From Isurus oxyrinchus (Eukaryota), in NCBI GenBank assembly GCA_026770705.1, contig JANJGN010000052.1, positions 930,001 through 994,000 on the forward strand: a DNA stretch of 64,000 bases. Reading direction: 5' to 3'. The notes under the pieces were generated by a model. The model was not told the origin of the DNA and did not search any database. It saw nothing but the letters and a program-made list of their open reading frames with translations. Shown here piece after piece: positions 4,279 through 30,974 of this stretch. Both the position numbers and the translations under genes were made by a program. How positions within the stretch are numbered: position 1 is the first letter of the stretch; each line of letters begins with the position of its first letter.

Positions 4279-5081
4279 CCATCCAGTCCAAGTCTCACTT
4301 TGGCCTGTGAGCAGAACACAGCTCACACAGTTTGGCTGCAGGTGTCTCCCAGCTTTCTATCCTTGTATATCTGTTCTCATGTCCCTATTCCAAATAAATG
4401 AACCCACAATGTGTTTACCCAATTCCGTATCAGTGGCTGGTGCCTTTATATCATTATAAAAACACAACATGGTGATCGGTGGTGGCCAAACATTCAGGCA
4501 GCAAGATTCAGTACAGATATGACGTGGTGAACAGCCTTAGATCGAGCTACGTGACATGAGACGATCCTCGATGCTTTGGTCAGACCACAACAGAGACACA
4601 GCATCAGAGAGGGTTGAAATCGCAGTGTACTGACTGCTCAGGAAACCTTTGAAGACACAGTGATGGGAAAGAGCTCAAGTAAAGAGCTGGGGAGCAGACG
4701 GATCCCTCGTGGTGGGATTACAGCACACGGCCTGTAGGTCAGTGAGTGGGACAGTGTGTATCGCCAGGACCAGCAGCAGGTTAGCTCAGTCAGGGAAGGC
4801 GAGTGACCAGGGTGTGGGCTGGATCGATAGTGAGCGAGGGAGAGTCAAACACACAAAAACCATTATAAAAATCAGCCCAGAGAAGTTAGTGATTATAACG
4901 GGCGGCTTCGAGATTGCTGAACAGCAAATTGAATAAAAAACAAAGACTCCATTACTCCGTGGTGTGTTCCTGCCACAACCCGTCTTCGTGGGCGGAGCTT
5001 CGGAAAAGCGCACGAAAGGGGCTAAAGCGACACTCATCCCAGATCCTGTAGGAGAAGGAAGGTCAAAGGAATATTGTCAGA

Positions 5082-6270
5082 ATGTCCACGAAATTCCCCA
5101 GTTTGAACTGGGATGTAGCTGACCGACTATCTGAATTCAGAATGTTTAAACAGCGTACAGAGCTCTGGTTTCCTGATTCAGGTGTGACTGAACCAGACGA
5201 ACAAGCCATAAAAATTCACCTCGCGATTGGGAATGAAGGTCTACACAGGCTGAACACGTCAGGATTAACAGCAGAAGAGCGAAAGGATCCCCAATAGATA
5301 TGGACGATATTGGAAGACAGGTTCAGAATCAGGTTAAACTCCATATTCATCAACTAGAGTTTATGTCATTTCATCAGCCTACACAATCCATAGACCACTT
5401 CATCAGCCGATGTAGAGAAAAGGGTACGCACTGTGATTTCAAACACAGAGTCTGCAGACAGAGTTTTTGAGTTGGTGATCACATCCACTCCCATGGAAGC
5501 CTTCCAGAAAGATCTGCTAGATAAGACCAAAACCTATAGCATTGAAGAGTTACTCAAGGATGGACATAAATATGAAGTGATCCTCGCAGGTCAACAAGCT
5601 TACAGGTCCTCAATACAACATCAATTGTTGACACACTCACTAGAACATCCAAACCTAGTGAGACTTGTGGAAGGTGTGGCCTTCTGCAGGCACCAAGGAA
5701 ATGCCCAGCTTTCCACCAAGCCATCAAGGCTTGTGGCAGAAAGGGCCATTGACAGCGGCAGGGCACTAGAGCAAAGGCTGATGCAGCTACAAAGAGCCGT
5801 GCGCTGATCCAAACAATCCCTGCACAACGGGGAAACTTCAAGCAATAAGGATGACCATCCGCTATCCCATCAGGAACATATACATGTGGTGACTGACAAA
5901 CCAGGAATTGGCGATGATGTACACGACGAGACTAGGAGCGGTGATCGATATTCCACCTCTCACACATATCCTGACGTGGCTTGCCAATAAATTGTGGATT
6001 GTGGTCTTTATTGATCTCTCTGGGCACATCAAATAAACTGAAAATGTTCCCATAGGGGTGGGATTTTCTGGCCCCACCCACTTCCAAGATTGTCTGGTCC
6101 GGCTGAAAGCCAATGGATTTATGTCTGTCCCAGTCTCAGAAACTATCCCATAAACTCAGTTCATGACATAACATTGAAATATGCAGAAAGATTCAACAAT
6201 ATTGGCAGTTTCATGGGAGCTGCAACATTACACCTGCAGGAGAATGCAAGTCTGTCAGACTCCTTGCATT
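5082..6270 (+). mobile_element. Degenerate Ty3/Gypsy gag (Mag-like) with pol remnant
   Basis: MSTKFPSLNW...FRMFKQR...AIGNEG gag N-terminus; decayed double knuckle CGRCG..RKCPAF..ACGRKGH at ~5666-5750; stops and frameshifts. Confidence 0.7.
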
Positions 6271-7645
6271 AAAATTAATACAATCCAACTTTGCCACGCT
6301 ATCTTGAGCCTTAAATGGCCAATAATTTCTATGCCTTCCAGGTTCATTTGCTCTCTTCTAATTTTGGCTGTGCATCTCTCTCTGTTGAACTTCCTCTCGG
6401 GATCCCATCCCCTGCTATATTACTTTAAAGCCTTCTCAATTGCATCAAGGGTGTAATGTCAATTGAAACCAGGGACAACATCAAAGAATGACAATCCCAC
6501 AGATCAATGTGAGCAATTAAAGAAACCTCCAGACAATTTTGCCACCACAAGATCTCGACATAACAGCAGATTACCTCTACGCTTTAGAGACTCAAATATT
6601 CAACAGATCTATACACTTATGTAATTGTCAAGAAATATGAAAATGATACCAGGAACCTCTTGTTCCCTGTCCTTCTCAAAGATCCATCCCTGCAGCAGGA
6701 GCCTGAAGAGTTACTGAAGAGTGGGTCTTAATTTATCAGATTGTAGAATGATCCGGAATAGAAGGATGCCATTTGGCCCATCGAGCCTGTGCTGGGCCTT
6801 TGAAAGATCTGTCCAATTAGTCCCACTCTAACCTCTGCTCTCTCCTCCACAGCCCTGCAAAATGTCCCCTTCAAGTATTTATCTAGTTCCCCTTCTGAAA
6901 GTTCCTGTTGAATCTGCTGCCACCAGCCTTTCAAGCAGTGAGTCAATGGTCTCTCTCTGAGCTGCAAAGTGCTAATGTTCTGAGAACTTTAAACACTGCA
7001 GCAGATCAGAGACAATCATGATAACTCAGAATATTTGACAGTTTTACACACAGACAGCTTTACCTTTCTTCTCTCTTTCAGTTATCTTGCTCCCTTATTG
7101 AAGTATCTAGCATGGTGAGAATGGACAGTAAGTGTGACACTGAACAGCCTGTCTATTCTAGGAGCTGCTGTGTTGTCTTCATGGGAAATTCTGACTAAAA
7201 TCAGCAATAGACACAAAATTTCAGGGCATTGTTATCCGAGTCCCAGCATCAGGATAGACTTCATCCCCCAGTTGGTATCCCTGATTCTCTATTCAGCCGA
7301 TCGCTCCCCTGTCACTGGATGAACTACACTGCCTCCCAGTCCAGCAATGACTCAAATTTCAAATTCTCATCATCGATTTCTTACCCCACCATCCCCCCTC
7401 TACACTCCCAATCCCTGTAACCTCCTCCAACCCTAAAACCCTCTGAGATCTCTGCTCTCCTCCAATTCTGCTGTCAGACAGGGAGTCAGTGTATATCAGT
7501 GAGCACAGGGGTGATGGGTGAATGGGACTTGGTGTCAGTTTGTACACTGGATCACTGCTGAATCGGTTCCCAATCACACTCAATAAGAATGATCTTTTAC
7601 AAAGACTATTAGCCATAAACCTGTCCGAGCTGATGATGTTATTAC

Positions 7646-7685
7646 CTTGGAGAAGTGACAGGAGGAAGTAGGATTTCCCGATCAT
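7646..7685 (-). CDS. Locus S1 leader exon coding part (MIGKSYFLLSLLQ-)
   Basis: ATG 7683-7685, 40 nt, phase-1 donor AG|gtaat; acceptor tttcag at 7728; in frame with the V exon. Confidence 0.85.
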
Positions 7686-8120
7686 TGTCCACTCCCAGAT
7701 ATTTCATAAGCTTCTGACTCTCAAACTCTGAAAGAGAAAGGAGTTAATGAGACCTCACCTCTTGTCCGACAGCTCTCAAGAGATCAGAACTGCTTTTGGA
7801 CAATGTCTTGACAGACTAATTTGATTCTCTGTGGGATGATAGGTGCTCTGCAGAGAGTTACAAGGCTTTAAGAAAGAAAAACATTGAAGGATTTGCATTT
7901 CTATAGCACCTTTCACCACCTCAAGACGTCCCAAAGCTCATGTCTCTGCACTTCCCTCATCCCTTGAGCTAGAAAGATGTTCTGTACAACAGACTTGAGT
8001 CTCACACCCAGATCTCAATAATCAGTAGAAATCTTTCAAAGGCATCAATCATTGGAATCTGTCTTCATAAAGTCACAACATCAACAAAGGACGGTGTTGG
8101 TGGTGGAAGTGAATTCCAAT

Positions 8121-8280
8121 CATTCCGTTACTTACCCAGGACCTGTCCGACTGCTCGTCTGGGGAGGAACTGCCCACATGCTCTGCTTGGGCTGAATGAC
8201 CTCTTCCTGTGCTGCCCCCTCTGTATGTTTAATTAGAAAGGGTTGATGTGTCACTGTGAGACAAAATGAGGAAGTGGGTA
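8121..8280 (-). promoter_or_regulatory. Putative promoter/non-coding exon 1 module of S1
   Basis: Minus-strand donor GG|gtaagt at 8135; AAAATGAGGAAGT PU.1/Spi-type site at ~8263-8275; module recurs at 14860, 15508 and 21440. Confidence 0.6.
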
Positions 8281-8489
8281 ACCAGTGAGAAGATCGAGGA
8301 TGTTTTGTGCTCTCAGCAAAACGTTTACCATGTGATGATCTGTCAGCTCAAATTTGGGCAGCTGTAGTCATGAAGCTTCTCCATTGGCTCCGTGGGTTTA
8401 GACTCCTCCCCCTCACCTCGGAGGCTGAAACTCAGGCGATAAGAGTTCCTAATACAGGTCTCTGGCCTTATGATACATTTCAACGATCC

Positions 8490-9890
8490 CTGTTATCATT
8501 ACGGAGGGAGTGCTGCACTGTCAGCGGGAGTTTACTGTGGGATTGCTGCTCTATCAGAGGGTCAGTACTGAGGGAGTGCTGCACTGTAAGAGGGTCAGTA
8601 CTGAGGGAGTGCTGCACTGTCGGAGGGTCAGTACTGAGGGAGTGCTGCACTGTCATAGGGTCAGTAATGAGGGAGTGCTGCACTGTCAGAAGGTCTGTAC
8701 TGAGTGAGTTCCGCACAGGTGGAGGGTCAGTATTGAGGGGGTGCCGGACTGTGGGAGGGTTTGTACTGACGTAGAGCGGAGTGCGAGGAGATATCCTTTC
8801 ATGACAAAGTTTAACTGGAATTTATTTAAACAGAATTTAAACAGTACTGTGTGTTATTGCAAAAGAAAGGATTTGAGGAACTAACTCTTGTTCCCGTAAG
8901 CCTAAAAATAATTTTCACTGATTTCTATGATTTAGCATTGAAACCTCCCTCTTTGGGCACCAGTCTTGATTGAAACAACTCGCACAGCACTGTGGGAGGG
9001 TGAGTACTGAGGGAATGCTGCACTGTGGGAGGGTGAGAACTGAGGGAGTGCTGCACTGTGGGAGTGTGAGTACTGAGGGAGTGTTGCACTGTGAGAGGGT
9101 CAGTACTGAGGGAGTGCTGCACTGTGGGAGTGTGAGTACTGAGGGAGTGCTGCACTGTGGGAGTGTGAGTACTGAGGGAGTGCTGCACTGTGGGAGAGTG
9201 AGTACTGAGGGAGTGCTGCACTGTCAGAGGGTCAGTAATGTGGGAGTGCTGCACTGTCACAGGATCAGTAATGAGGGAGTGCTGCACTGTCACAGGATCA
9301 GTAATGTGGGAGTGCTGAACTGTCGGCGGGTCTGTACTGAGTGAGTTCCGCACAGTCGGAGGGTCATTATTGAGGGGGTGCTGGACAGTGGGAGGGTTAG
9401 TACTGAGGTAGAGTGGAGCGTGAGGAGATATCCTTTCATGGCAAAGTTTAACTGGAATTTATTTAAACAGAGAGTCTTGTACTGTGTGTTATTGCAAAAG
9501 AAAGGATTTGAGGAACTAAGTCTTGTTCCCGTTAGCCTAAAAATAATTTTCAACGATTTCAATGATTTAGCAATGAAACCTCCCTCTTTGGGCATCAGTC
9601 TTGATTGAAACAACTCACACAGCACTTCAGGAGAGTGAGTACTGAGGGAGGGCTGCACTGTGGGAGAGTGAGTACTGAGGGAGTGCTGCACTGTGGGAGC
9701 GTCAGTACTGAGGGAGGGCTGCACAGTGGGAGGGTGAGCACTGAGGGAGTGCTGCACTGTGGGATCGTCAGTACTGAGGGAGTGCTGAACTGTTGGAAGG
9801 TCAGTAGTGAGGGAGGGATACAGTGTCAGAAGATCAGTCCTGTGGGAGTGCTGCACTGTCAGAAGGTGTGTACCGAGGTAGTGCTGCACA
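8490..9890. repeat. Three blocks of the 33-bp satellite separated by a duplicated ~230-bp spacer
   Basis: Unit cagtactgagggagtgctgcactgtcagagggt (11-aa ORF periodicity); 8770-8990 duplicated at 9405-9625. Confidence 0.92.
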
Positions 9891-10109
9891 CAGCCAGACA
9901 ATGCCGTGGTTATGATGTGTCCACACAGCAGGACTGGGGAGCACCAGGTATAAGGAAAAGTTTCAGCTTGCTGAGGAGAAGAAGGAGAATCTCTCGTTCC
10001 AGGTTTCTCTCCGTACATTAAGAAGCAGGCATGCCGATGTTTCATTGCACTCTGTCTGCTGATGGGAGTCCGCTTGGAAATTGCTGTTTGTGCTGATGGA
10101 AAGAATAAA

Positions 10110-10720
10110 CTTTTCATAAATCGAGGGATTGAGTACAAACACAGGGAGGTTATGCTGAACATTTATAAAGCTCTGGTTAGGTCACAACTAGAGTATTGTG
10201 TCCAGTTCTGGTCTCTTCACTTTGGGAAGGAAGTGAGGGTCCTTGAGAGGGTGGGGAGGAGATTGAGCAGAATGGGTCCAGGGATGAGGGATTTTAGCTA
10301 CAAGGTTGGGTTGGAGAAGCTGGGGTTGTTCTCCTTGGAGCAAAGGAGATTGAGGGGGGATCTGATCGAGGTGTACAAGATGATGATGGGTTTAGATACG
10401 GTAGACAAAGAGAAGCTGTTGCCATTAGCTGATGGGACAAGGACTGGGGGACACAGATTGAAGGTTTTGGGCAGAGGGGGATGTGAGGAGGAACTTTTTT
10501 AAACAGCGAGTGGTAATGAGCTGGAACTCACTGCCTACGAGGATGGTGGAAGCGGAGACGATGAACAATTTCAAAAGGAAATTGGATGGACACTTGAGGG
10601 GAAATAAACTCACAGGGATACGGGGATAGAGAGGGGGAATGGGACTGAGTGGATTGCTCTACAGAGAGACAGCATGGACTCAATGGGCTGAATGGGCTCC
10701 CACTGTGCTGGAATGCCTCT
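10110..10720 (+). mobile_element. CR1-type LINE 3' fragment
   Basis: YKALVRSQLEYCVQFWS...SLEQRRLRGDLIEVYK; closely similar copy on the minus strand at 30500-30950. Confidence 0.92.
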
Positions 10721-10831
10721 CTGATACGAAGGTGATTTTAACCAGGACACTGACCAGTTTCATTGCAACTTAACCCAACATCACACATTATTTGTCCGCA
10801 CTGACTGACCAGATTGTTGCTGTACAAAGCT

Positions 10832-10971
10832 TCAAACAGTCTGTCGACTTCCTTTCACTGTTTGTCTCTCCCAGACACAGACTCCAGTGATAGTGATAAC
10901 CACAGCCACAAGGAATATCACAGCTCGTATTCCCAGGATCAGGATCACGTGCAGAATCTCTCCTCCACTGT
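10832..10971 (-). CDS. Locus S2 terminal exon: TM with intramembrane Arg plus short Tyr-free tail
   Basis: Acceptor ctttctgtgtgttctctag; phase-1 reading (Y)SGGEILHVILILGIRAVIFLVAVVITITGVCVWERQTVKGSRQTV*; hand-translated, frame not in ORF track. Confidence 0.85.
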
Positions 10972-12634
10972 CTAGAGAACACACAGAAAGAAATCATCAC
11001 TGACTCTCCACTTTCAATCTCTCACTCTGGCTGAACAATCAAGCTTCATAACACTGCAACATTTGCTGTAATATTGACCCATCCACTGGGATTCAATGTG
11101 GAATGAATGTTTTCATTGTAAACACTCGAAGAGTGGACAATCGGAACTTTCCCCTTAGCGTGGAACATTGGTGAGAATGGATCATTGTGCTGTTGGACTC
11201 CCTGTCCAATGTTTCTCTCCATCGCTGTGTACAGGATTGTGCTGTAGAAAATTCTGGAAATGTTTAGTGCAGGGTGGAAATCCATCTCGGATGCGTGTGC
11301 GAATCGGGCAGGATCGAGATGGACTCCCCCACGGACTTACACACCCCGCTAAATAAACAGTTCCAATCTTTACCCAGAGAGAGGGGAGAATGTGGAACTC
11401 ACTCCCACTGGGAATGGTTGAGGTGAACAGTATCGATGTATTTAAGGGGCAAGAGGGTCGGTAACCAGAGGGGCACAGATTGACGAACCGGAGGGGGAGA
11501 TGAGGAGAATTTGTTTTGACAGAGCGAGTTGTTGTGATCTGGAAGGTGCTGCCTGAAAGGGTGGTGGAAGCAGATTCAATAGGAACTTTCAAAAGGGGAA
11601 TTGGATAAACACTTGAAGGAGGAAGATGGGGGCAAAGTGGAGTGGTGGTTAGTGGATCTGATTGGATAGAACATTGAAAGACCTGGCACAGGCACAATGG
11701 GCTGAATGGCCTCCTCCTGTGCTGTATCATTCTCCGCTTCCATGATCTCTCCCCCAGTCAGTAACCACTCCAGATCCCTCTTGAAGGTGACAGAGAAACA
11801 GCAACCACCACACCCACTGACAGCACATTCCCGAGGATCACTACTCTCTGGGAAAAGATGAACTCCCCAACATCCAGCCTATTCCTGCTTCCCGGAGAGT
11901 GTAAACACTTCAGGGAGGTGCTGAGGAAGTTCTCAATAAAATGAATTATCAAATCTACCATTTGAGAAATAATTGAATTCCGATGAACTCCCAGCTTGTG
12001 TAGCAAACTGGGAAGTAGATTTGCTTGAAAAGCTGGGAAACACAAGGATTAAGTGCTACAATGCCACCACTGGTGGGAGGCTGTAACTACAGTGTGACGT
12101 TTACATAGGCAGTCATCACTATAAACAGGGGCTTTGGACATAATGGGCACGGAAATAGTGAGAACAGGATGTAAGCTTTTCATCAGCAGGAATTCTCTTA
12201 CTAAACCTCTCCACCTCTCTCTTACTCTCAGATTCACAAAAAAATCACAGAATCAGATAAAGAGGAGTTGGGACTAGTTATTCGTCAAAGGGTTAGGTTT
12301 CAGGTAGCTCCTTAAAGGGAGAGAGAGAGTTGGAGAAGCAGAGAGTATCTATGAGTGCCTCTATGCATCTGAGTGTTTGTACGAGTAATTTCCATATTCT
12401 TCCATAAATATGAATGGGAACACAAATCCCAGAATTCAGCCCACGCTCCAGTGCAGTACTGAGGGAGGTCAGATAACCCATGAGGGAGTCTTGTGCTAGT
12501 GTGTTTGTTTGTGAGTGTGTCTTTGTGTGTGGTCATATATGTGTGTCTGCACGTGTCTATTTAGGTCTGTACGTTTGAGGGTGTTTGTGTAGTATTCGAA
12601 TCTGAGAGAGATGTTGAAGTCTGTGTACACTCAC

Positions 12635-12787
12635 ATTCCACAGTAATGGTTATGAACCCCTCCACTGCTCCATGTTCATTCTCTGCCACACACTGATAGT
12701 CTCCAGTGTCCCTGGATGTAACGTGAGGAATCAGCAACCACAGCTCATTGTTGGAACTTCTTCTGTTCATTTGGACATTCAGATGTC
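12635..12787 (-). pseudogene. Locus S2 5'-truncated C2-set exon
   Basis: MNRRSSNNELWLLIPHVTSRDTGDYQCVAENEHGAVEGFITITVE with gtgag donor; similarity to the 282-nt paralogous exons stops at ~12787 and no acceptor is evident. Confidence 0.88.
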
Positions 12788-13310
12788 ATGGCAGGAATCA
12801 AGAACCCCGTTCGCACGATTACCAACAGAAAGTGAACAACAATTTATACTTAATGGAAAGACAGTGCTGATTGGTTGGCAAGTGGTCTCTGATAGGTGGA
12901 GGTGTTGCCGTGGAGAATGCTGTTTGCGATATGAGAAGTTTAGACAGCTTGTCTCTTCATTCAGCAATAATCATATAAAGATCAATTAACTTCTATCGAC
13001 TGTGAAGCACTTTGAGTGGCCTGAGAATGTGGATACTGAGAACGGGCTGCACTGTCAGAGGGTCAGCGCTGAGGGAGTGCTGATGTAGAATGAAAGATGT
13101 CGGTACAGTTAATGCTTTTCATCATTGATATTAAAGTGATTTTTAGAGGTTGCTTTGGGACTGAACTGGAAGCTATCACCAGGTTATTGAGAATCAGACA
13201 GTGTGTTATAATAAGCTGTGTTTTGTGTTATTATGTAAACGTCACAGTTTGTGTTATTTCCCATTGAGTGTTGGATGTGAATTGTTGAGTAATTATAACA
13301 CAGCACTTAC

Positions 13311-13684
13311 CAGAAACGTGAAGCTGGGTTACAGGATAGTAGCTGTAACTATTCCTGCTGTCAAACTCTATTCTGAAAAAATAAGGTCCTGCATCTTCCC
13401 GTCTGATGTTGTTTATAATCAGGGAACAGTCACCATCTTTCAGGTCTCCAGACAGCCGGGTACGATGGCGGAATCTTTGATCCCTGTGATTGTGACCCTC
13501 GGAGTGAAAGGCTATAGACCATTTAGGCTGTGGGTTCCCATCTATTCCTTTCAACCAGATTCTGCACGTGATCTCCCTACGAAATTTGATAAGTAACTGT
13601 AATGACATGGAATCTGTACACATGAACCTTCCTGTGCTGTCACCTCTCGTGGAGTGTCACCTTTCCACTCTTGTGACAGTCCAA
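13311..13684 (-). pseudogene. Locus S2 Siglec V-set exon (Arg retained, YFFRIE) with frameshift and mutated acceptor
   Basis: 374 nt (1-nt loss near 13562 splits it across ORFs 13551-13733 and 13231-13623); acceptor reads cccccg instead of ccccag. Confidence 0.88.
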
Positions 13685-14387
13685 CGGGGGAGAGAAATAT
13701 CAATATTTGACTCTGGATGGTTTGTAGATCCACTAGACTCGATATCCACCCCCTCCATCACTGGGGCACAGTGGCTGCAGTGTGGACCATCTACAGGACA
13801 CACAAGGAACTCCCCAAGGTTTCACAACAGATAGAAGAGAATCCTGGACACAGGAGTGGACAAGTTCATTCTACATTGGCTCATGGTCCTCAGGACCCTG
13901 TTTAGTGAAGCCAGTCTTCCATCCAACACAGTGTCTACAAGATACACAGGGAAACTGTGTAAATATCTCATCTCTCAACACTGAATGGGCTGAGCTTCAG
14001 TTTAACTTTCAGTATTTTTAAATTTCCATATTGTGGTTGCTATGGTGAAACTGTGCAGGAAGTGTGAGGGCTGGACTCTCTGTCTATTCTCACTGCAGCT
14101 GTGATGTGGTCGTGGTGATTCTCAGTAAAATGAAACCCTCTGATCTCCTCCATCGCCGAGGTTTAGGGAGTGAATTCCAGAGCTCAGGTCCCAGGCAGCT
14201 GTAGGCACGGCCGCCAGTATTGGAGTGATGGGAATTGGGGGATGGTCAAGAGGCCAGATTTGGAGTAACACAGAGATCTGGGAAGTTGATTGGTTGCATT
14301 GCAGGAGGTTACAGAGATAAAGAGATAAGAATGATCTTTTACAAAGACTGTTAAATATAAATCTGTCCAAGCTGACGATGATATTAC

Positions 14388-14448
14388 CTTGGAGAAGTGA
14401 CAAGAGGAAGTAGATTTCCCGATCATTGTCCACTCCCAGATATTCCAT
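14388..14448 (-). pseudogene. Locus S2 leader exon; homologous ATG (14424-14426) is out of frame, upstream ATG (14446-14448) is in frame
   Basis: 39 nt from homologous ATG to donor vs 40 nt in S1; upstream ATG gives MEYLGVDNDREIYFLLSLLQ. Confidence 0.75.
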
Positions 14449-14859
14449 CCACTTCTCACTCTCAAGCTGTGAAAGAGAAAGGAGTTAATGAGACCTCACC
14501 TCTTGTCCGACAGCTCTCGAGAGATCAGAACTGCTTTTAGACAATGTCTTCACAGACTAATTTGATTCTCTGTGGGATGATAGGTGCTCAGCAGAGAGTT
14601 ACAAGGCTTTAAGAAAAACAAACAATGAAGGATTTGCATTTCTATAGCACCTTTCACCACCTCAGGGCATCCCAAAGCTCATGTCTCTGCACTTCCCTCA
14701 TCCCTTGAACTAGAAAGATGTTCGGTACAACAGACTTGAGCCTCACACCCAGATCTCAATAATCAGTAGAAATCTTTCAAAGGCATCAGTCATTGGAATC
14801 TGTCTTTATAAAGTCACAACATCAACAAAGGACGGTGTTGGTGGTGGAAGTGAATTCCA

Positions 14860-15670
14860 ATCGTTCCGTTACTTACCCAGGACCTGTCCGACTGCTCGCC
14901 TGGGGAGGAACTGCCCACACGCTCTGCTTGGGCTGAATGACCTCTTCCTGTGCTGCTCCCTCTGTGTATTTAATGAGAAAGGGTTGATGTGTGTCTGTGA
15001 GTCAAAATGAGGAAGTTGGATCAAAGTGACAGACCAGCTCATGTTTTGAGATGTTGGTGAACTGTTAATCCTTTGTGTCCTGACCCTGTGTTGATATTTC
15101 TGCTCACAGGTGGACAGTCATTGACCAGGAGTTTCTCCTGTGGGTCAGTGGGTTTCACAGCCAAATTCAGGGGGTCAGAATGTTGTGGGATTCAAGACCC
15201 CATTCAGGGGACGTCTGCCCCACAGAGTAGACTGAAACTGCCCAGCGTCAGTCCTGAGGGAGTGCTGCACTGTCGGATGGTCATTACTGCACTATTGTAA
15301 GGTCAGTACTGAGGGAGATCTCCACTGTTTGAGGGTGAGTACTGAGGGAGTGCTGCACTGTCAGAGGGACATTAATCAGGGAGTGCTGCAATGTTGGAGG
15401 ATCAGTACTGAGGGAGTGCTGCACTGTTGAAGGGTCAGTATTAAGGTGCTGATTTACAAGACAGGACAATGGATTAGGAGCCCTCAGAACTCCCCCCGTG
15501 ATTTCCAATCATTCCGTTACTTACCCCGGACCTGTCCGACTGCTCGCCTGGGGAGGAACTGCCCACACGCTCTGCTTGGGCTGAATGACCTCTTCCTGTG
15601 CTGCTCCCTATTTGTGTTTAATTAAAAAGGGTGGATGTGTCACTGTGAGACAAAATGAGGAAGTGCTTGG
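14860..15670 (-). promoter_or_regulatory. Two tandem copies of the promoter/exon-1 module upstream of S2
   Basis: Donors at 14876 and 15524; GAGGAAGT at 15009-15016 and 15657-15664. Confidence 0.55.
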
Positions 15671-15769
15671 TACCAAGTGAGAAAGATGCTCTTTGCCTCG
15701 CACTGTTAGAAAACTGTTAACCCTTTGCGTGCCAAGAATGTTTTTGAAGGGCCATTGACTGTTCACATG

Positions 15770-17630
15770 CAACAAGCTCGAGGGGTTGACTGGGCCTCCT
15801 CCTGTTCCTGTGTAACAGGCTCGAGGAGGGTGAATGGGCCTACTCCTGTTCCTGTGTAACAGGTTCAAGGGGACAGAATGGGCCTCCTCCTGTTCCTGTG
15901 TAACAGGCTCGAGGGGCTGAATGGGCCTCCTCCTGTTTCTGTGTAACAGGCTCATGGGGCACAATGGGTCTCCTCCTGGTTCTGTGTAACAGGCTCGAGG
16001 GGCTGAATGGGCCTCCTCCTGTTCCTGTGTAAAAGGCTCGAGGGGCTGAATGGGCCTCCTCCTGTTCCTGTGTAAAAGGCTCGAGGGGCTGAATGGGCCT
16101 CCTCCTGTTCCTGTGTAACAGGCTCATGGGGGCTGAATGGCCTCCTTCTCTCACTGTGTACCAGGCTCATGGGGCTGAGTGGGCCTCCTCCTGTTCCTGT
16201 GTAAAAGGCTAAAGGGGCTGAATTGGCCTTCCCCAGTTCCTGTGTACCAGGCTCGAGTACATTAGGAGCATCATTGGAAGCAGCGTTTCACTTGCACTTC
16301 CCTCAATTTAATCTACTGCCTTCACTGCTCCCAATGTGGTCTCCTCTACATGGGACAGACCAAACACAGACTGGGTGATCGCTCTGATGAACACCTTCGG
16401 TCTGTCCACAAGCATGACCCAGACCTCCCTGTCGCTTGCCATTTTAACACCCCACCCTGCTCTCATGCCCACATGTCCGTCCTTGGCCTGCTGCATTGTT
16501 CCAGTGAAGCCCAACACAAATAGGAGGAACAACACCTCATCTTCCGACCTGGCACTTTACAGCCTTCCGGTCTGAATATTGAGTTCAACACTTTCAGATC
16601 ATGAACTCTCTCCTCCATCCCCACTCCCTTTCCAATCTCCCTTTTCCATTAATTTATCAGTTTTAATATTTTTTTTATTTATATATTTTTCTTTTCCCAC
16701 ATTTTTCCATTATTTTTAAATGTTTTACATCTGTTGTTGTATCTCTACCTTTTAGCCTATTTCAATCCTTTCCCCCCACCCCACCCCCACTAGGACTATC
16801 TGTCTCTTGCTCGTCCTGCTTTCTACCCTTAATGTCCCCATTAGCACCTTCCTCAGATAATATCACCACCGTCAACACCCCTTTGTCCTTTTGTCTATCA
16901 CATCTTTGGCAACCTCTTCTTTACCTCCACCTATCACTGGCCCACAATCCAGCTCTACCTGCCCCACCCCCTCTACCAGCTAAAACATCACCTCATTTCT
17001 CGATTCCCTTAGTTCTGATGAAGAGTCATACAGACCCAAAACGTCAAGTGTGTTCCTCTCCACAGATCCTGTCAGACCTGCTGAGTTTTTCCAGCTATTT
17101 TTGTTTTTGTTGCCGTTCATGTGGAACAGGCTTGAGTGGCTGAATGGAGCCCCTAATGTTCCTGTGTAACAAGCTTGTGGAGGCTGAATGGGTCTCCTGT
17201 TCCTGTGTAACAGGCTCAAGGGGACAGAATGGGCCTCCTCCTGTTCCTGTGTAACAGGCTCGAGGAGGGTGAATGGGCCTCCTCCTGTTCCTGTGTAACA
17301 GGCTCAAGGGGACAGAATGGGCCTCCTCCTGTTCCTGTGTAACAGGCTCGAGGAGGGTGAATGGGCCTCCTCCTGTTCCTGTGTAACACGTTCAAGGGGA
17401 CAGAATGGGCCTCCTCCTGTTCCTCTGTAAAAGACTCGAGGAGGGTGAATGGGCCTCCTCCTGTTCCTGTGTAACAGGCTCGAGGAGGGTGAATAGGCCT
17501 CCTCCTGTTCCTGTGTAACAGGTTCAAGGGGACAGAATGGGCCTCCTCCTGTTCCTGTGTAACAGGCTTAAGGGAACAGACTGGGCCTCCTCCTGTTCCT
17601 GTGTAACAGGCTCGAGGAGCTGAATGTCCT
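15770..17630. repeat. ~43-bp minisatellite (gaatgggcctcctcctgttcctgtgtaacaggctcgaggggct) split by a Penelope fragment
   Basis: Tandem units at 15770-16258 and 17120-17630; unit resembles the CR1 3' terminus. Confidence 0.9.
16280..17110 (+). mobile_element. Penelope-like element 3' fragment (GIY-YIG region)
   Basis: Closely similar to 55120-55960, which encodes IYCIHCSQCGFLYIGDTK. Confidence 0.85.
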
Positions 17631-17664
17631 CCTCTCATTAAAAATAAATACTGCAGATGCTGTA

Positions 17665-17856
17665 AATCTGAAATAAACACAGAAAATGCTGCATTAACTC
17701 AGCAGGTCTGGCAGCAGCTGTGGAGAGAGAAACAGAGTTTTTGCTTTGAGACTCTGAAGAAGGGTCATACGGACTCGAAATGTTTATTCTGTTTATCTCT
17801 GCACAGATGCTGCCAGACCTACTCAGTTTCTCCAGGATTTTCTGTTTTTATTTCAG
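17665..17856. mobile_element. Short inverted-repeat element (Penelope-terminus-like or MITE-like)
   Basis: ctgaaataaacacagaaaatgc...ggtctggcagca is mirrored by tgctgccagacc...attttctgtttttatttcag; partial copies at 33440-33525 and 61540-61670. Confidence 0.7.
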
Positions 17857-18964
17857 GTGCTCTCTTGTTCCTGTGTAGCACGCTCAAGGGGGCCTCCTCC
17901 TGTTCCGATTCAATGGGCAGTCAAAGCATGTGCCTGATTTTGGACCGCGAACCCAAATCTGTCCTCAGGGCATTGATAGAGGAAATGACCAGTTACAGAT
18001 CAATGCAGGAGGATTATTTATTTTCCCAATCTTTGAATCAAGTATCTCATCAAACACAGAGCGGAAACAGGATCGAGGATGTTGGTCTCTGTAATCTGTA
18101 ACACATCGCAAAGTCCACCCATCCACTCAGCCTTCAGGATGGATGCTAATTGTACTCTCCAAGTGTGAAGGACTAAAATGGTGGTTTATTGCAGCTCTAT
18201 CTCATTCTGTTATCAAAGCTGTCTCATCCATCCAATGACATATTGAAGAAGATAAACCTGCAACCAATTTTTCACATCATAGTTTCCAATGTTCATTGGC
18301 AACATCAATGTAAACATGTCATGCTGAAATGATGTCCTCCCACCAGTGGTGGCACTGTAGCACATCTGTTATCCTCTAAGCTGCAGAGAATTTCTCAACT
18401 CTCCAATCAAATTGTTTCCCTGTTTCCCAGATTCTTGTTTGTTTCGCTGTTTAACGATGAAGTGTAAAATCCAAATATATATCTGAAAATACATTTGACT
18501 ACAAAATGCTGAGTAAATTTTGCCAATCTCCTCTGCTCCAATTATCCACCGATCCTGCATTTCCTGAAGTCTACACTGGCTGATGAATATTCTGTAAACA
18601 CTGACAGACAGAAAGGTGAATAACAGAATGAAAATTAACTCATAATCACGGACACGGGATTGAATTTGTCCGTTCTGTCCTGGTACATCATCGAACGATA
18701 TCTAAAGATATTTACAATCAGAATGGAGAGAAGGATGTTTCCAACAGTGAGGGACAATTCTGAAGGAGGATGTTCGAATTGAAACCCACAGACAATCATC
18801 CTGGATAGATCATTCCGAAGAAATTCCATCAGATTGTAACAAGAGGTTTAAATCTATTTCCTGGGAGTGAGTTCCTGTGGATATTAGGAAGGTAAATTGG
18901 AGTTTTGAATGATTCTCCCGTTCTGTATTCTCCCCACACTGTGTGTGTCTCATTCTTGCTCAGT

Positions 18965-19081
18965 TTATAAATTCCCATAAACAGAATCCTTGGCAAATTC
19001 ACAGTTTGCGTAAAGATCATCATCTGTATCAGGATTGACTCCGCGGTTAGATTTCATTTCCAGATCCTTCTCATCTTTCTT
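18965..19081 (-). CDS. Locus S3 last cytoplasmic exon (KKDEKDLEMKSNRGVNPDTDDDLYANCEFAKDSVYGNL*)
   Basis: Acceptor tttctattacag; phase 0, 39 codons incl. TAA; two Tyr motifs after acidic residues; minus-strand AATAAA at 18185-18190 and 18017-18022. Confidence 0.82.
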   Translation of the reverse strand, partial: KKDEKDLEMKSNRGVNPDTDDDLYANCEFAKDSVYGNL

Positions 19082-19134
19082 CTGTAATAGAAACAGAAAT
19101 GATCAGAGTGACAATCAGAGTGATCAGTGTTTAG

Positions 19135-20710
19135 TATTATTGATCCAAATCAAAAAATTCCATCCACAGTAGAGACATTAATTATTGATACTGAACGGGG
19201 TTTGATTATTGATCCTGAACGATGTTTGATTATTGATTCTGAACGGGGTTTGATTTTTAATTCTGAACGGGGTTTGATTATTGATTCTGAAAAGGGTTTG
19301 ATTATTTATTCTGAATGGGTTTTGATTATTGAATCTGAACGGAGTTTGATTATTGATCCTGAACGTAGTTTGATTATTGATACTGAACAGGGTTTGATTA
19401 TTGATTCTGAACGGGGTTTGATTATTGATACTGAATGGGGTTTGATTATTGATACTGAACGGGGTTAGATTATTGATACTGAACGGGGTTTGATTTTTAA
19501 TACTGAACGGGGTTAGATTATTGATACTGAACGGGGTTTGATTTTTAATTCTGAACGGGGTTTGATTATTGATTCTGAACGGGATTAGATTATTGATACT
19601 GAACAGGTTTGATTTTTAATTCTGAACAGGGTTTGATTATTGATACTGAATGGGGTTTGATTATTGATACTGAATGGGGTTTGATTATTGATTCTGAAAG
19701 GGTTTTGATTATTGAATCTGAACGGGGTTTGATTATTGATCCTGAACGAAGTTAGATTATTGATATTGAACGGGGTTTGATTATTGATATTGAACGGGGT
19801 TTGATTATTGATTCTGAACGGTGTTTGATTATTGATCCTGAACGGAGTTTGATTATTGATACTGAATGGGGTTTGATTATTGATTCTGAACAGTGTTTGA
19901 TTATTGATTCTGAACGGGGTTTGATTATTGATACTGAACGGTGTTTGATTCTTGATTCTGAACTGGGTTTTGATTATTGATTCTGAAAGGGGTTTGATTA
20001 TTGATTCTGAATGGGGTTTGATTATTGATACTAAACGGGGTTGGATTATTGATACTGAACGGGGTTTGATTATGTATACTGAACGGGGTTTGATTATTGA
20101 TTCTGAACGCGGTTTGATTATTGATACTGAGCGGGGTTTGATTATTAATTCTGAACGGGGTTTGTTTATTGATACTGAACGGGGATTGATTATTGATTCT
20201 GAAAGGGGTTTGATTATTGATACTAAACGGGGTTGGTTTATTGATACTGAACGGGGTTTGATTATGTATACTGAACGGGGATTGATTATTGATTCTGTAC
20301 GCGGTTTGATTATTGATTCTGAACGGGGTTTGATTATTAATTCTGAACTGGGTTTGTTTATTGATACTGAACGGGGATTGATTATTGATTCTGAATGGGG
20401 TTTGATTATTAATTCTGAACAGGGTTTGATTATTGATACTGAACGTGGTTTGTTTATTGATACTGAACGGGGATTGATTATTTATTCTGAAAGGGGTTTG
20501 ATTATTAATTCTGAACGGGGTTTGATTATTGATACTGATCGGGGTTTGATTATTGATTCTGAACGGGTTTTATTATTGTTACTGAACGGAGTTTGGTTAT
20601 TGATACTGAACGGGGTTTGATTATTGATTCTGAACGGGGTGTGTTATTGATTCTGAACGGGGTTTGATTATTGATTCTGAACGGGGTTTGATTATTGATT
20701 CTGAACGGTG
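19135..20710. repeat. 24-bp minisatellite (ttgattattgattctgaacggggt)
   Basis: ~1.6 kb of tandem units filling the last S3 intron. Confidence 0.95.
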
Positions 20711-20841
20711 TTGGGTGTGAGTTTGGTTGGGTTTGGGAGTGACTGTATAAAACATTGCAGATACAGGAGTGGAGCAGCCATATCAATAACCAGGCTACTG
20801 GAGCAGCTGAGAGGCTGGGGATCCTGTGGTGTGTGACTCAC

Positions 20842-20947
20842 CTGATTCCTCAAAGCCCAACCACGCTCACAGTTTTCATAAACAGGACCTCGATATTCAT
20901 CAACACGGTGGTTCGATTTGATTCCTGCTTTCCCCTCACCTCTCTTC
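20842..20947 (-). CDS. Locus S3 first cytoplasmic exon (KRGEGKAGIKSNHRVDEYRGPVYENCERGWALRNQ); acceptor reads CG, not AG
   Basis: 106 nt, phase 2 to 0, exactly bridging the TM exon and last exon; donor CAG|gtgagt; polypyrimidine tract present but ends tttcg. Confidence 0.7.
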
Positions 20948-21292
20948 CGAAATAGAGATGGAAATGGACAGAATGACAATCAACATGATGTGTATTCGGT
21001 GTTGGGTTTGATTATTGGGGAGAGAGTTCCAGATTTCCACTCCCCTTTGTGTGAAGAAGTGCTTCCTGACATCACCCCTGAACGGCCTGGCTCCAATCTA
21101 AAGTTCCAGCCCCCTTGTTCTGGACTCCACCCGACCCCCACCACCCACCCCCACCCGAGGGAATAGCTTCTCTCTATCGACCCTATCGAGTGTTTAATCA
21201 GTTTGAACCCCTCAATTAGATCCCTCCTAAATCTTCTAGACCCGAGTGAATATAATCGTAGACTGTGTGTAACCTGTCTGCATAATTTAACC

Positions 21293-21700
21293 AGAAAGAT
21301 GTTCTGTACAACAGACTTGAGCCTCACACCCAGATCTCAATAATCAGTAGAAATCTTTCAAAGGCATCAATCATTGGAATCTGTCTTTATAAAGTCACAA
21401 CATCAACAAAGGACGGTGTTGGTGGTGGAAGTGAATTCCAATCGTTCCGTTACTTACCCAGTACCTGTCCGACTGCTCGCCTGGGGAGGAACTGCCCACA
21501 CGCTCTGCTTGGGCTGAATGACCTCTTCTTGTGCTGCTCCCTCTGTGTATTTAATGAGAAAGGGTTGATGTCTCTCTGTGAGTCAAATCAGGAATTGGGG
21601 AACAATTGTGAAAACCCTTTCATTGAAACGTAGGGCCTTAGTGTTGTGTTGTTAACAAACTGTTAACCCTTTGTGTCCTGACTCTGTGACGTGATTCCTG
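21293..21700 (-). promoter_or_regulatory. Orphan copy of the S1/S2 promoter/exon-1 module inside an S3 intron
   Basis: Near-identical to 14712-15090; donor at 21457; PU.1 core altered to CAGGAATT. Confidence 0.65.
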
Positions 21701-22262
21701 TGTAAAGCTGAGCAGTCGGTGAGCGAGTTTCAATTCACTGCTCACTCCAGGTGTTGAGGTGGATCTTCTGAAGGAGCAGATGTTGCTCAGCGCTCCTTAA
21801 AAATGTGAGAGACTGAACAACGTGTAAGAGGACGAGAGAAAGAATGAGAAGGAGAGCATTAGTGGAGATAAGAGAGAGTGAATGAGAGAGAGAGAGAATG
21901 AGAGAGAAAATGAGAAGGCGTGCATTAGTGGAGGTAAGAGAGAGAGTGAATGAAACATGGAAAAAGGAAAGAGATTGCATTCACTAACAAAAGAAAGGTT
22001 TTCATTTATATCGCACCTTTCACAAACTCAGGAGGTCACAAGGTATCTTATGGTCCGGGTCAACCCTGCCAGTTACAGGACTGAGTTGTGAAACAGTGAG
22101 TGTTGGATGAGATGTTAAACGGTAGGTGAACATCAAAACTCTTCAGGGGCTGTGAAGGGTTTTGGATTGTAAAAGTTGCTATAGAAATGCAAGTTCTTTC
22201 TATAAGGAGAGAAGGTTGAAGAAAACATGTTCAAAAACAACCAATTAAACCTTCACACTTAC

Positions 22263-22359
22263 TTTCTCACACACTTGAAGATGAAGAATCCACTCAGTCC
22301 AACACTCAAACAGATTCCAGCTCCAAGCAATCCTGCTTTCCATTCATTGGAATCTCGCC
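22263..22359 (-). CDS. Locus S3 transmembrane exon (RRDSNEWKAGLLGAGICLSVGLSGFFIFKCVRK)
   Basis: ttacag/gtaag; 97 nt, phase 1 to 2; paralogous to 52623-52719. Confidence 0.88.
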
Positions 22360-22579
22360 CTGTAAAATCAGCCAATGAATGACTCCGGTACAGTTTGAGA
22401 ATGGTTCCCTATGTACATGTAGTAATTCTGAACTTGTGAAGTGATATTGTCTATGCATGAAAGGTCTATACAAATAACATTTATCTATGTAATATTTATT
22501 GATAATATCCATGTACATGCAGGTTTCTATAAGGAGGATTCACATATAACAGGGGTGCCAAGCTGCTGAGGTGACACAC

Positions 22580-23590
22580 AGGACTACATACACACCAAAC
22601 AGCGGAAACAACATGCTACAGACAGAGCAAAGCGATCCCACAACCAACGGGTCAGATCTAAGCTCTGCAGTGCTGCCACATCCAGTCATGAATGGTGATG
22701 GACAATTAAAGATCTAACAGGAGGAGGATGTTCCACAAATATCCCCATCCTTAATGATGGGGGAGCTCAGCACATCAGTGCAAACGACAAGGCTGAAGCA
22801 TTGGCAACCATGTTCAGCCAGAAGTGCTGAGTGGATGCTCCATCTCGGCCTCCTCCAGAGGGTCCCAGCATCACAGATGTCAGCTTTCAGACAATTCGAT
22901 TGACTCCACGTGACATCAGGAATCAGCTGATGATACTGGATACAGCAAAGGCTTTTGGCCCTGGCAACAACCCGGCAACAGGAAATAATGTGGTTACAAG
23001 AACGGGTAAGAGGCTGGGAACTCTGCGGTGAGTAACTCACCTCCTGACTCTCCAAAGCCTGTCCACCATCGACAAGGCACAAGTCAGGATTGTGATGGAA
23101 TAATCTCCACTTGGCTGGATGAGTGCAGCTCCAACAACACTCAAGAAGCTCGACACCATCCAGGAGCAGCTTGTTTGATCGACAGCCCATCCACCAGCAT
23201 AAACATTCATACCCTCCACCACTGGCACACAATGGCAGCAGTGTATGCACCATCTACAAGATGCACTGCAGCAACTCACCAAAGCTTCTTCGACTGCACC
23301 TTCCAAACCCTTAACCTCTTCCACCAAGACAGTTCCAAGTCAGTGAGGTGTGTGACTTGGAAATCAACATGAGGTGGTGGTCTGCCCTGGGACTTGGAAC
23401 TATATCGGCCGTTCCTTCACCGTCGTTGGGTCAAAATCCTGGAACTCCCTCCCTAACAGCACTGTTGGTGTGCCTACACCACATGGACTGCAGTGGTTAA
23501 AGAAGGCAGCTCACCACCACCTTCTCAAGGGGCAGTTACAGATGGGCAATAATTTCTGGCCTTGTCAACAATGCCCACATCCCATGAGCT
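22580..23590 (+). mobile_element. Degenerate non-LTR LINE fragments (CR1/L2 group)
   Basis: Same family as 44800-45850 (RT motifs), 49120-49570 and 52030-52500; shared 3' end aaggcagctcaccaccaccttctcaaggg. Confidence 0.8.
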
Positions 23591-23625
23591 AATAACAAGA
23601 GAATGTAGAATTCTGTGTAACTCAC

Positions 23626-23907
23626 GTTCCACAGTGATGGTTATGAATCCCTCCACTGCTCCATGTTCATTCTCTGCCACACACTGATAGTCTCCAGTGT
23701 CCCTGGATGTAACGTGAGGAATCACCAACCACAGCTCATTGTTGGAACTTGTTCTGTTCATTGGGACATTAAGATGTCGCCACGTCAGGTTAGAAGCTGG
23801 GAAGCTCTCGACAGAGCAGATTATCACTGTAGAATTCCCCTCAATTATATTGATCGATGAAGCGTTAATCATATCAAGAGAAGTAATTGAGAGGTTCTGT
23901 GGAGCAT
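23626..23907 (-). CDS. Locus S3 C2-set exon (domain 5)
   Basis: ttttag/gtgag; 282 nt, phase 1-1; APQNLSI...IICSVESFPASNLTW...DTGDYQCVAENEHG. Confidence 0.9.
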
Positions 23908-24386
23908 CTAAAAACATATAAAGATTTTAGAGTGAGCAAGCACAATGCACATCAAGACTCCATGTATCATCTCTCCGTATCTGATGTCTGAATACAATTC
24001 CAGGCACCTTCCTCAGCATAAGTTCCTCTGTCACATTTATAATGGACACTGCCTATGTAAACTGTCACACTGCAGTTGCATTCCCCCACCAGTTGAGGTG
24101 CTATCAATCTAGAATGAAAGAAACTTTCATTCACATCCTCAGGATTTCGCCAAGCCTTTACAGGCAATGAATTGTATTTGATTGATGGAGCACTGAGGGG
24201 TAAATCTACAATTCACTGTTCAGGAGTTTGGTCATCCAATTCAGGGTCTTGTTGATCTGGAGTTTACCTTCGTTCCATCCAGAATTGGAGCTGACACCAA
24301 GACTCCAGTGCAGTGAGTGCGTGTGGGAGTGCATTTATGTATATGTGTTCAAATCTGAGAGAGTTGTTGAAGTCTGTGTAACTCAC

Positions 24387-30950: not shown

Positions 30951-30974
30951 CCAGAAGCAAAAAATCAGTTCAGA

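What the first reader, a model, noticed from the sequence alone, without database searches (positions are those of the whole stretch)
10832..10971. Hidden activating-type TM exon with intramembrane arginine
The phase-1 reading gives ILHVILILGIRAVIFLVAVVITITGVCVW plus a 13-residue Tyr-free tail and stop. It is unrelated to the 97-nt TM exons of S3/S4. Established: a TM Arg or Lys with a short tail marks receptors that couple to FcR-gamma, DAP12 or DAP10 (LILRA, OSCAR, NKp46, Siglec-14). The phase matches the upstream C2 donor (T+AC=Tyr). The ORF track shows only a wrong frame.
Basis: partly seen in the sequence, partly recalled or inferred. Interest (0 to 1): 0.8.

Follow-up and report, generated by a model that had tools for sequence, protein, structure and literature searches.

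The report
Shark arginine membrane exon, dead gene
This is a real copy of a conserved shark exon that gives Siglec-like immune receptors a membrane anchor with a buried arginine and almost no tail (the usual build of an activating receptor), but the gene it closes here is broken in at least four places, so this copy is most likely a leftover.

Summary
On the minus strand, 10971-10832 is a 140-nt phase-1 coding stretch behind a canonical acceptor. It encodes a 29-residue hydrophobic segment with one Arg, a 12-residue Tyr-free tail and a stop.

It is not a chance ORF. Its 45-aa peptide finds shark proteins that end in the same segment (best E 3e-13). Thirteen of 14 fetched proteins, from six shark species, carry LGIRA 26-34 residues from their C-terminus. 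RefSeq calls them CD33-like, Siglec-12/13/14, sialoadhesin-like, CD22-like, CEACAM5-like and SLAMF9-like.

Contigs of presumed RNA runs join the exon at the predicted acceptor, in frame, to a C2-type exon end. They also show a canonical intron in the 3' untranslated region (3'UTR) after the stop.

The local gene (S2) is dead. Its leader has a 1-nt deletion, its V acceptor reads CG instead of AG, its V exon is frameshifted, and a ~5.5 kb deletion removed the first C2 exon and half of another. The partner exon seen in the RNA is absent from S2, so the RNA probably comes from an intact paralogue or orthologue.

Adaptor coupling is inferred only. The scan already reported this cassette four times on other DNA of this genome. 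This is a further, probably dead, member of a known kind, of low interest.

The parts
10832..10971 (-). Coding part of the terminal exon (140 nt, phase 1). It encodes SGGE, a 29-residue TM segment with Arg, a 12-residue tail and the stop TGA at 10834-10832.
   Evidence: Homology to the C-termini of shark receptors.
10810..10971 (-). Whole exon as used in contigs (162 nt). The acceptor AG is at 10973-10972 and the donor GT at 10809-10808.
   Evidence: loose ends at 10973 in X1 and X2, joint 10092/10810 in X2, and contig 10810-10973 in X5. One search gives the site contexts.
10093..10809 (-). 3'UTR intron of 717 nt, GT..AG on the minus strand, starting 22 nt after the stop. The next exon starts at 10092.
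   Evidence: table 5 (X2, depth 624, ends CT..AC on the + strand) and table 7 (X5 loose end at 10097); acceptor ccatcag|CAC.
12636..12785 (-). Remnant of a C2-type exon of S2: the last 50 codons plus a phase-1 donor. It has no acceptor, lacks the first half, and has TGA directly upstream.
   Evidence: It is 96.3% identical to S4 56284-56444.
13311..13684 (-). V-set exon of S2, 374 nt (S4 has 369, S1 has 378). The acceptor dinucleotide reads CG instead of AG (13686-13685). A 1-nt deletion near 13564 leads to in-frame stops.
   Evidence: table 4: some contigs carry one extra letter at 13564.
14388..14426 (-). Leader exon of S2, 39 nt against 40 nt in S1. The 1-nt deletion after codon 5 shifts the signal-peptide frame.
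12788..13103 (-). Junction filler of the deletion. Here S2 lacks the ~5.5 kb that in S4 (61938-56445) holds the first C2 exon and the 5' half of the later C2 exon. The filler is repeat-like sequence.
   Evidence: flanks 13104-13265 ~ 61939-62100 and 12627-12787 ~ 56284-56444, both 96.3%; no first-C2-type exon between 10972 and 30000.

Best explanation
The stretch is a genuine copy of a conserved shark 'arginine membrane cassette'. This is a terminal coding exon that supplies a transmembrane helix with one buried Arg (motif ILGIRAxIF) and a tail of 5 to 12 residues after the conserved helix-end position (Trp here), without tyrosine.

In intact family members the exon is spliced in phase 1 behind the last Ig exon of Siglec-like and other Ig-superfamily receptors. 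By analogy with Siglec-14/-16, LILRA and activating KIR, the Arg would pair inside the membrane with an Asp of a dimeric signalling adaptor (DAP12, FcR-gamma, CD3-zeta or DAP10 class). That pairing would make the receptor activating. This step is inferred, not shown.

At this locus the exon sits at the 3' end of gene copy S2. S2 is derived from an S4-like gene and is broken by a leader frameshift, a lost V acceptor, a V frameshift and a ~5.5 kb deletion. This copy is therefore most likely an intact-looking relic of a pseudogene. The spliced RNA signal most likely comes from an intact paralogue or orthologue with a near-identical exon.
For: Exon anatomy: canonical acceptor, open phase-1 frame, stop, canonical donor and 3'UTR intron.

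Homology:
- 9 proteins at E<=1e-3 in 1.84e9, and 8 of the 9 match at their extreme C-terminus.
- 3 of 5 and 5 of 24 candidates pass in the two word-based searches.
- 13 of 14 fetched proteins carry LGIRA 26-34 residues from the end, with no Tyr after it.
- Arg is invariant in 11 of 11 aligned rows.
- The matches carry V-set, Ig_CD22 and C2-set domains upstream.
- They come from two shark orders.

RNA-type contigs:
- Exon depth is 4500-6860 in X1, 1300-1600 in X2 and 150-230 in X5. The downstream flank bin (10618-10759) reads 303, 87 and 75.
- Loose ends at 10973 in X1 and X2 read, in frame, as the end of a first-C2-type exon followed by Asp and the exon.

Dead local gene.

Partner exon: it is absent from S2, and the only match in the window is the S4 exon 50 kb upstream, with 2 of 27 mismatches.

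Possible foreign origin of the contigs: five differences from the window in the adjoining intron are shared by runs of two organism labels (table 3).

Earlier scan notes report an intact two-domain paralogue and another dead copy elsewhere in this genome (not tested here).
Against: - The exon itself has no lesion.
- Contigs bridge its acceptor into the upstream intron at 96-98.7% identity (X1 10963-11272, X2 10944-11408, X5 10944-11335). This locus, or a very close copy, is therefore transcribed or present in those runs.
- Low-depth contigs at about 99% identity cover unique intron sequence at 12050-12617 in X1.
- Some contigs restore the V frame at 13564 (table 4), so the V frameshift may be allelic or an assembly error.
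- All runs are Logan contigs whose RNA nature is only guessed, and their organism labels are coded.
- I could not see any paralogue's DNA, so assigning the RNA to another copy is an inference.
- Adaptor pairing is untested.
Confidence: 0.6

Rival explanations
1. The exon is alive at this locus. Either it serves as an alternative terminal exon for an intact upstream gene, with the S4 first-C2 exon at 60990-61339 spliced over about 50 kb to 10971. That would give a short V-C2-TM(Arg) activating isoform beside the long ITIM form. Or S2 is intact in other haplotypes, and the lesions seen here are haplotype-specific or assembly errors.
For: - The loose end joined to the exon matches only the S4 first-C2 exon end in the window (25 of 27). 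Both mismatches are synonymous in the reading.
- All Ig exons here have phase-1 donors, so any of them would join in frame.
- Depth on the exon is high and its edges are sharp.
- Contigs bridge the intron-exon boundary at up to 98.7% identity.
- Some contigs carry the frame-restoring letter at 13564 (table 4).
Against: - The splice would have to pass over the complete S3 gene and the S2 remains.
- Two mismatches in 27 nt.
- Four independent lesions, including a substitution in the acceptor and a 5.5 kb deletion, are unlikely to be assembly errors.
- No protein encoded by this window and ending in this exon appeared in the two word-based searches, which covered lengths of 120-383 and 364-1158 aa. 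Their sensitivity is limited.
- Two-domain genes of exactly this build exist as separate genes in catsharks.
Confidence: 0.25
2. The cassette is real, but its Arg does not dock an ITAM or DAP10 adaptor. It would serve another purpose, for example retention in the ER until pairing with a different partner chain, or helix packing within receptor dimers.
For: No adaptor was examined here. The hydrophobic stretch is unusually long (29 residues) and also holds a His. No paper on shark adaptors or shark activating Siglecs turned up.
Against: The build matches the textbook definition of activating paired receptors: one basic TM residue, a short tail without motifs, and close inhibitory relatives with ITIM tails in the same cluster. 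That definition comes from passages of PMC13358205, sections 4.3.4 and 8, seen. The Arg and its neighbours are invariant across receptor families whose ectodomains are unrelated, which suggests one shared partner.
Confidence: 0.1
3. The stretch is a chance open frame in intronic or repeat DNA and not an exon at all.
For: The ORF is short, and the region is rich in repeats.
Against: E 3e-13 to the C-termini of shark receptors, canonical splice sites on both sides, spliced contigs in three of four runs, and no copy elsewhere in the window.
Confidence: 0.01

Closest known systems
RefSeq models of catshark two-domain receptors: 'sialic acid-binding Ig-like lectin 13' (P0011, 272 aa) and 'lectin 14 isoform X2' (P0012, 273 aa) of Scyliorhinus canicula, and 'CD33-like' XP_072325011.1 (P0001) of S. 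torazame
   Same: The same terminal segment: SGGE..VILILGIRAVIF..CVWER plus a short tail. P0001 is 82% identical over 45 residues and ends with the same KGSRQTV. The segment is joined behind a first-C2 exon ending ..ERTL.L.VQ, with Asp or Tyr at the junction, as in the contigs.
   Different: Those are complete leader-V-C2-TM models. Here the leader, the V exon and the C2 exons of the local gene are broken or missing. They are automatic predictions; I found no paper on them.
Human Siglec-14 and Siglec-16 (activating partners of Siglec-5 and Siglec-11), DAP12-coupled
   Same: They are Siglec-type ectodomains with a short tail and a basic TM residue. They are encoded next to close ITIM-bearing relatives and shaped by duplication and gene conversion (passages of PMC13358205, sections 4.3.4 and 8). 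The cluster here likewise holds ITIM-type neighbours (S3 and S4, per earlier notes) and near-identical Ig exons.
   Different: No sequence similarity of the TM exon to them was shown. Orthology is not implied by the RefSeq names. The adaptor in sharks is unknown. Which residue human Siglec-14 and -16 carry is recalled, not taken from a call.
   Same: One Arg in the outer half of the TM helix and a very short tail.
   Different: Here the Arg is the 11th of 29 hydrophobic residues, which is deeper than I recall for those receptors (recall only, not tested). The ectodomain family also differs.
The other copies of the same cassette in this genome reported by this scan (s1-868598, s1-300793, s1-871670, s1-871938)
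   Same: The same kind of 140-letter exon with a TM Arg and a short tail. One copy is reported as closing an intact two-domain gene and one as a dead copy.
   Different: They lie on other DNA. Their sequences were not visible to me, so identity to this copy is unknown.

Membership tests
Shark Arg-TM terminal cassette (ILGIRAxIF) | Motif LGIRA within a hydrophobic helix, 26-34 residues from the C-terminus | tested here: met
   The window peptide has ILILGIRAVIF. 13 of 14 fetched proteins have the motif at that position.
Shark Arg-TM terminal cassette (ILGIRAxIF) | Phase-1 acceptor, so that it joins behind phase-1 Ig exons; the stop lies in the same exon | tested here: met
   The contig junction is in frame. 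The junction residues D, Y, L and N in homologues fit one donor base plus the first two bases of the cassette exon, which here are AC.
Activating (adaptor-coupled) Ig-superfamily receptors | A single basic residue inside the TM segment | tested here: met
   One Arg, invariant in 11 of 11 aligned rows. The definition comes from passages of PMC13358205.
Activating (adaptor-coupled) Ig-superfamily receptors | Short cytoplasmic tail without ITIM, ITSM or ITAM tyrosines | tested here: met
   The 12-residue tail ERQTVKGSRQTV has no Tyr. None of the 13 homologues has a Tyr after the motif.
Activating (adaptor-coupled) Ig-superfamily receptors | Physical and functional dependence on an Asp-bearing adaptor (DAP12, FcR-gamma, CD3-zeta, DAP10) | not testable with these tools
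   No adaptor sequence is in the window. This needs co-expression or co-precipitation.
Activating (adaptor-coupled) Ig-superfamily receptors | An intact gene: signal peptide and ligand-binding ectodomain in frame with the TM exon | tested here: not met
   For this copy: leader with a 1-nt deletion, V acceptor CG, V exon of 374 nt with stops, first C2 exon deleted. The feature is met in homologues P0011, P0012 and P0006.
Siglec family | N-terminal V-set domain of the Siglec/CD22 type with the conserved Arg of the F strand | tested here: inconclusive
   The S2 V exon is 87% identical to the S4 V exon in its second part and keeps YFFRIEF, but its frame is broken. Homologues hit Pfam V-set and Ig_CD22.
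Siglec family | Binding of sialylated glycans | not testable with these tools
   This needs a binding assay with an intact family member.

The most novel reading that the evidence does not exclude
One membrane cassette with an invariant ILGIRAxIF helix has been shuffled onto at least four kinds of Ig-superfamily ectodomain in sharks of two orders: Siglec/CD33-like, CD22-like, CEACAM5-like and SLAM-like, by RefSeq names. That would imply a single dedicated adaptor and an activating/inhibitory pairing system that is old in sharks. At this locus the exon might still be used, as an alternative end of the upstream ITIM-type gene. One gene would then make both an inhibitory and an activating form by choice of terminal exon.
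Probability: 0.12. Interest if true: 0.6.

Novelty: new member of a known kind. Interest (0 to 1): 0.22.

Why it matters
Paired activating and inhibitory receptors are well studied in mammals and little studied in cartilaginous fishes. The cassette shows that sharks build activating-type Siglec-like receptors in the familiar way, and that they reuse one membrane exon across receptor families.

This particular copy adds little. It documents birth and death in the cluster: a recent S4-like duplicate that lost its ectodomain exons but still carries an intact terminal exon. It also warns that RNA contigs map across near-identical copies.

The scan had already reported the cassette four times on other DNA of this genome.

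Tried and rejected
- Paralogue of the exon inside the window: none. blastn and tblastn at loose thresholds gave a best other hit of E 0.078.
- First-C2-type exon between S2's V exon and the TM exon, or anywhere in 10000-30000: none. tblastn at E<=20 gave only noise, best E 0.61.
- Direct V-to-TM splicing of S2, which would give a one-domain receptor like P0006: it would be in frame (G+AC). I rejected it because the V acceptor is CG and both the leader and the V exon are frameshifted.
- Identity of the X1 and X2 exon contigs with the window: I first read table 3 as showing no differences in the exon. I dropped this because X5's contig has 4 other letters there that the table does not list, and 63 rows are not shown.
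- Literature: seven searches listed no paper on shark Siglecs with a TM Arg or on shark DAP12 or FcR-gamma. Only listings and abstracts were seen, apart from passages of PMC13358205, which has 0 occurrences of 'shark' or 'cartilaginous'. Subscription journals and supplements were not searchable.
- Adaptor choice from the depth of the Arg in the helix: considered and left open. The comparison rests on recall only.
- P0008 (10 short stretches, 47% identity, no LGIRA) was dropped as a low-complexity match.

Full report
**What is there.** The gene lies on the minus strand. Reading downwards from 11000, a pyrimidine tract and AG (10973-10972) are followed at 10971 by AC AGT GGA GGA GAG and onward. 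In phase 1 this gives SGGE, then ILHVILILGIRAVIFLVAVVITITGVCVW, then ERQTVKGSRQTV, then TGA at 10834-10832.
The hydrophobic stretch has 29 residues with a single Arg at its 11th place and a His at its 3rd. The tail has 12 residues and no Tyr.
- A hydropathy scan of all six frames finds this segment and the S4 TM exon (52628-52690) as the only non-repetitive minus-strand windows at or above the threshold used.
- The default ORF listing shows only a 70-aa ORF in another frame. At 20 aa the right frame appears as a 50-aa ORF.
- There is no significant similarity to any other place in the window.

**It is a conserved exon, not a chance frame.** The 45-residue peptide, searched alone with phmmer against 1,835,955,588 representatives, gave 9 proteins at E<=0.001.
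- Eight of these match at their very C-terminus, with E from 3e-13 to 4e-5 and 68-82% identity. The ninth, P0008, is a low-complexity match and was dropped.
- Their names and sources are RefSeq or GenBank models: Scyliorhinus torazame (CD33-like, Siglec-12, a hypothetical protein), Chiloscyllium punctatum (Siglec-13, CD22-like), Hemiscyllium ocellatum (CD22-like), Rhincodon typus (sialoadhesin-like) and Mustelus asterias (SLAM family member 9-like).
- Two word-based searches restricted to the terminal segment added more. One gave S. canicula 'Siglec-13' and 'Siglec-14 isoform X2' (3 hits of 5 candidates). The other gave C. punctatum 'CEACAM5-like' and 'sialoadhesin-like' (5 hits of 24 candidates).
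- Of the 14 proteins fetched, 13 carry LGIRA 26-34 residues before the end, and none has a Tyr after it.
- In the alignment of the window peptide with ten of them, ILGIRA.IF is invariant and the Arg is present in 11 of 11 rows.
- Pfam finds V-set, Ig_CD22, C2-set_2 or other Ig domains upstream.
- The species belong to Carcharhiniformes and Orectolobiformes. Placing the remaining genera in those orders is recalled.

**RNA-type evidence.** One search for runs listed 20 runs, all with coded names, all kept as Logan contigs, and with 'RNA' only guessed. I laid X1 and X2 (one sample, organism A) and X5 and X6 (organism B, two studies) on 10050-14300.
- The two bins over the exon have depths 6860/5950 (X1), 1301/1300 (X2), 149/153 (X5) and 0 (X6). 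The next downstream bin has 303, 87, 75 and 94.
- In X1 and X2 a contig runs up to 10973 and continues with 27 and 21 letters that are not in the laid stretch. Read on the minus strand, these letters are the end of an exon coding ..ERTLVLTVQ plus one G. With the exon's AC this gives Asp and then SGGEILHV. This is the predicted acceptor and the predicted frame.
- A joint 10092/10810 (X2, depth 624) skips 717 nt with GT..AG on the minus strand, and a loose end in X5 at 10097 agrees. The exon is therefore 162 nt and is followed by a 3'UTR intron 22 nt after the stop. Its sites are canonical.
- X5 has a 165-nt contig exactly over 10810-10973, with 4 other letters and 1 inserted letter.

**The partner exon is not in the local gene.** The 27 letters match the window only once at 3 or fewer mismatches. 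That match is the end of the S4 first-C2 exon at 60993-61019, with 2 mismatches.
- tblastn with that exon finds only itself and the distant S3 counterpart at 30111-30419 (35% identity). Even at E<=20 it finds only noise (best E 0.61) between 10000 and 30000.
- The junction seen in RNA therefore cannot come from S2 as assembled here.

**State of the local gene S2.** S2 is an S4-like copy.
- 13104-13265 matches 61939-62100, and 12627-12787 matches 56284-56444, both at 96.3%. The ~5.5 kb lying between these blocks in S4 is replaced in S2 by 316 nt of repeat-like DNA. This removes the first C2 exon and the 5' half of the later C2 exon.
- The remnant at 12636-12785 keeps 50 codons and the phase-1 donor (T|GTGAGT). 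It has TGA directly upstream and no acceptor.
- The V exon (13684-13311) is 374 nt against 369 in S4 and 378 in S1, and it reads into stops after CHYSY...
- Its acceptor dinucleotide is CG where S1 and S4 have AG.
- The leader exon (14426-14388) is 39 nt against 40 in S1, which shifts the signal peptide after five codons.
- That makes four independent lesions. One of them is a substitution, so they are unlikely to be assembly noise.
- Against this, one contig each in X1 and X2 carries an extra letter at 13564 that restores the V frame, while another X2 contig lacks it (tables 4 and 8). The X1 contig is only about 95% identical over 105 nt, which fits a paralogue.

**Where the RNA comes from.**
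- Contigs bridge the acceptor into the upstream intron: X1 10963-11272 (4 differences), X2 10944-11408 (11 differences), X5 10944-11335 (15 differences and 1 gap).
- About 1.2 kb upstream of the exon is covered at roughly a fifth of the exon's depth. Coverage then falls to 13-150.
- Five of the differences (11010, 11051, 11128, 11261, 11292) are shared by X1, X2 and X5, that is by both organism labels (table 3).
- Together with the missing partner exon, this fits best a near-identical exon plus intron at another, intact locus, or the orthologous locus of related species. It fits this copy less well.
- Earlier notes of this scan report such copies on other DNA of the genome: one closing an intact two-domain gene and one dead. 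I did not test those notes.
- I cannot exclude that the exon is used here, for example from the S4 first-C2 exon 50 kb upstream. That is rival 1.

**How it would work.** The build matches the standard definition of the activating member of a paired receptor: a short tail and a basic residue in the membrane that docks an ITAM adaptor (DAP12, CD3-zeta, FcR-gamma) or DAP10. Siglec-14 and Siglec-16 are Siglec examples. This comes from passages of PMC13358205, sections 4.3.4 and 8.
- Invariance of the Arg and its neighbours across receptor families with unrelated ectodomains suggests one shared partner.
- Which adaptor is used, and whether there is any association at all, is not shown. Reasoning from the depth of the Arg in the helix would rest on recall and is left open.

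**Comparison and novelty.** The closest things are the automatic RefSeq models of catsharks with leader, V, first C2 and this cassette.
- None of my seven literature searches listed a paper on them. These covered listings and abstracts only, and supplements were closed.
- The cassette is thus annotated but, as far as I could see, undescribed in print. The scan had already found it four times in this genome.
- This copy is a further member and most likely a relic. I score interest at 0.22.

**Limits.**
- Runs and organisms are coded, and all runs are contigs whose RNA nature is a guess.
- Table 3 is incomplete (63 rows not shown).
- Nothing outside the window could be read, and the runs of N were left alone.

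Noticed in passing
window 10874 and 13736 (table 7, run X2): The same 27-letter loose end follows two unrelated places, one inside the TM exon and one in the intron before the S2 V exon. It is not in the window at 3 or fewer mismatches, and neither place has a canonical splice site. It may be a technical or repeated sequence.
   Followed up: partly
window 10972-12140: About 1.2 kb upstream of the TM exon is covered by contigs at roughly a fifth of the exon's depth in X1 and X2, after which coverage drops. Possible causes are a retained intron, an internal start, or a paralogue with a short intron.
   Followed up: no
window 7583-8699, 14325-15440, 21293-21612: The leader/promoter segment is repeated. 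S1's copy (ATG at 7685) and S2's are 82.6% identical over 1.1 kb. A third partial copy at 21293-21612 is 93.5% identical to 7971-8291.
   Followed up: no
window 23621-23926, 24382-24687, 56286-56591, 12618-12785: One C2-type exon is nearly identical across loci: 92-98% at protein level among S3's two copies and S4's, and 89% for the S2 remnant. The neighbouring exons are far more divergent.
   Followed up: partly
window 8495-9890, 24800-25690, 32000-32365, 34940-35500, 37370-38100: Long arrays of one tandem repeat family recur in the introns and spacers of the cluster on both strands, with shifted self-matches in steps of 33 nt. In translation they give long open frames.
   Followed up: no
window 10062-10707 (+ strand): This is a LINE-like fragment with a reverse-transcriptase-tail ORF, 92% identical to 30498-30952. 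The acceptor of the 3'UTR intron (10093/10092) lies at its edge on the opposite strand.
   Followed up: no
window 13596 (table 7, run X1): A contig matches the 5' part of the S2 V exon and then diverges into a loop sequence that resembles S4's without being identical. This is an expressed further V paralogue or allele.
   Followed up: no
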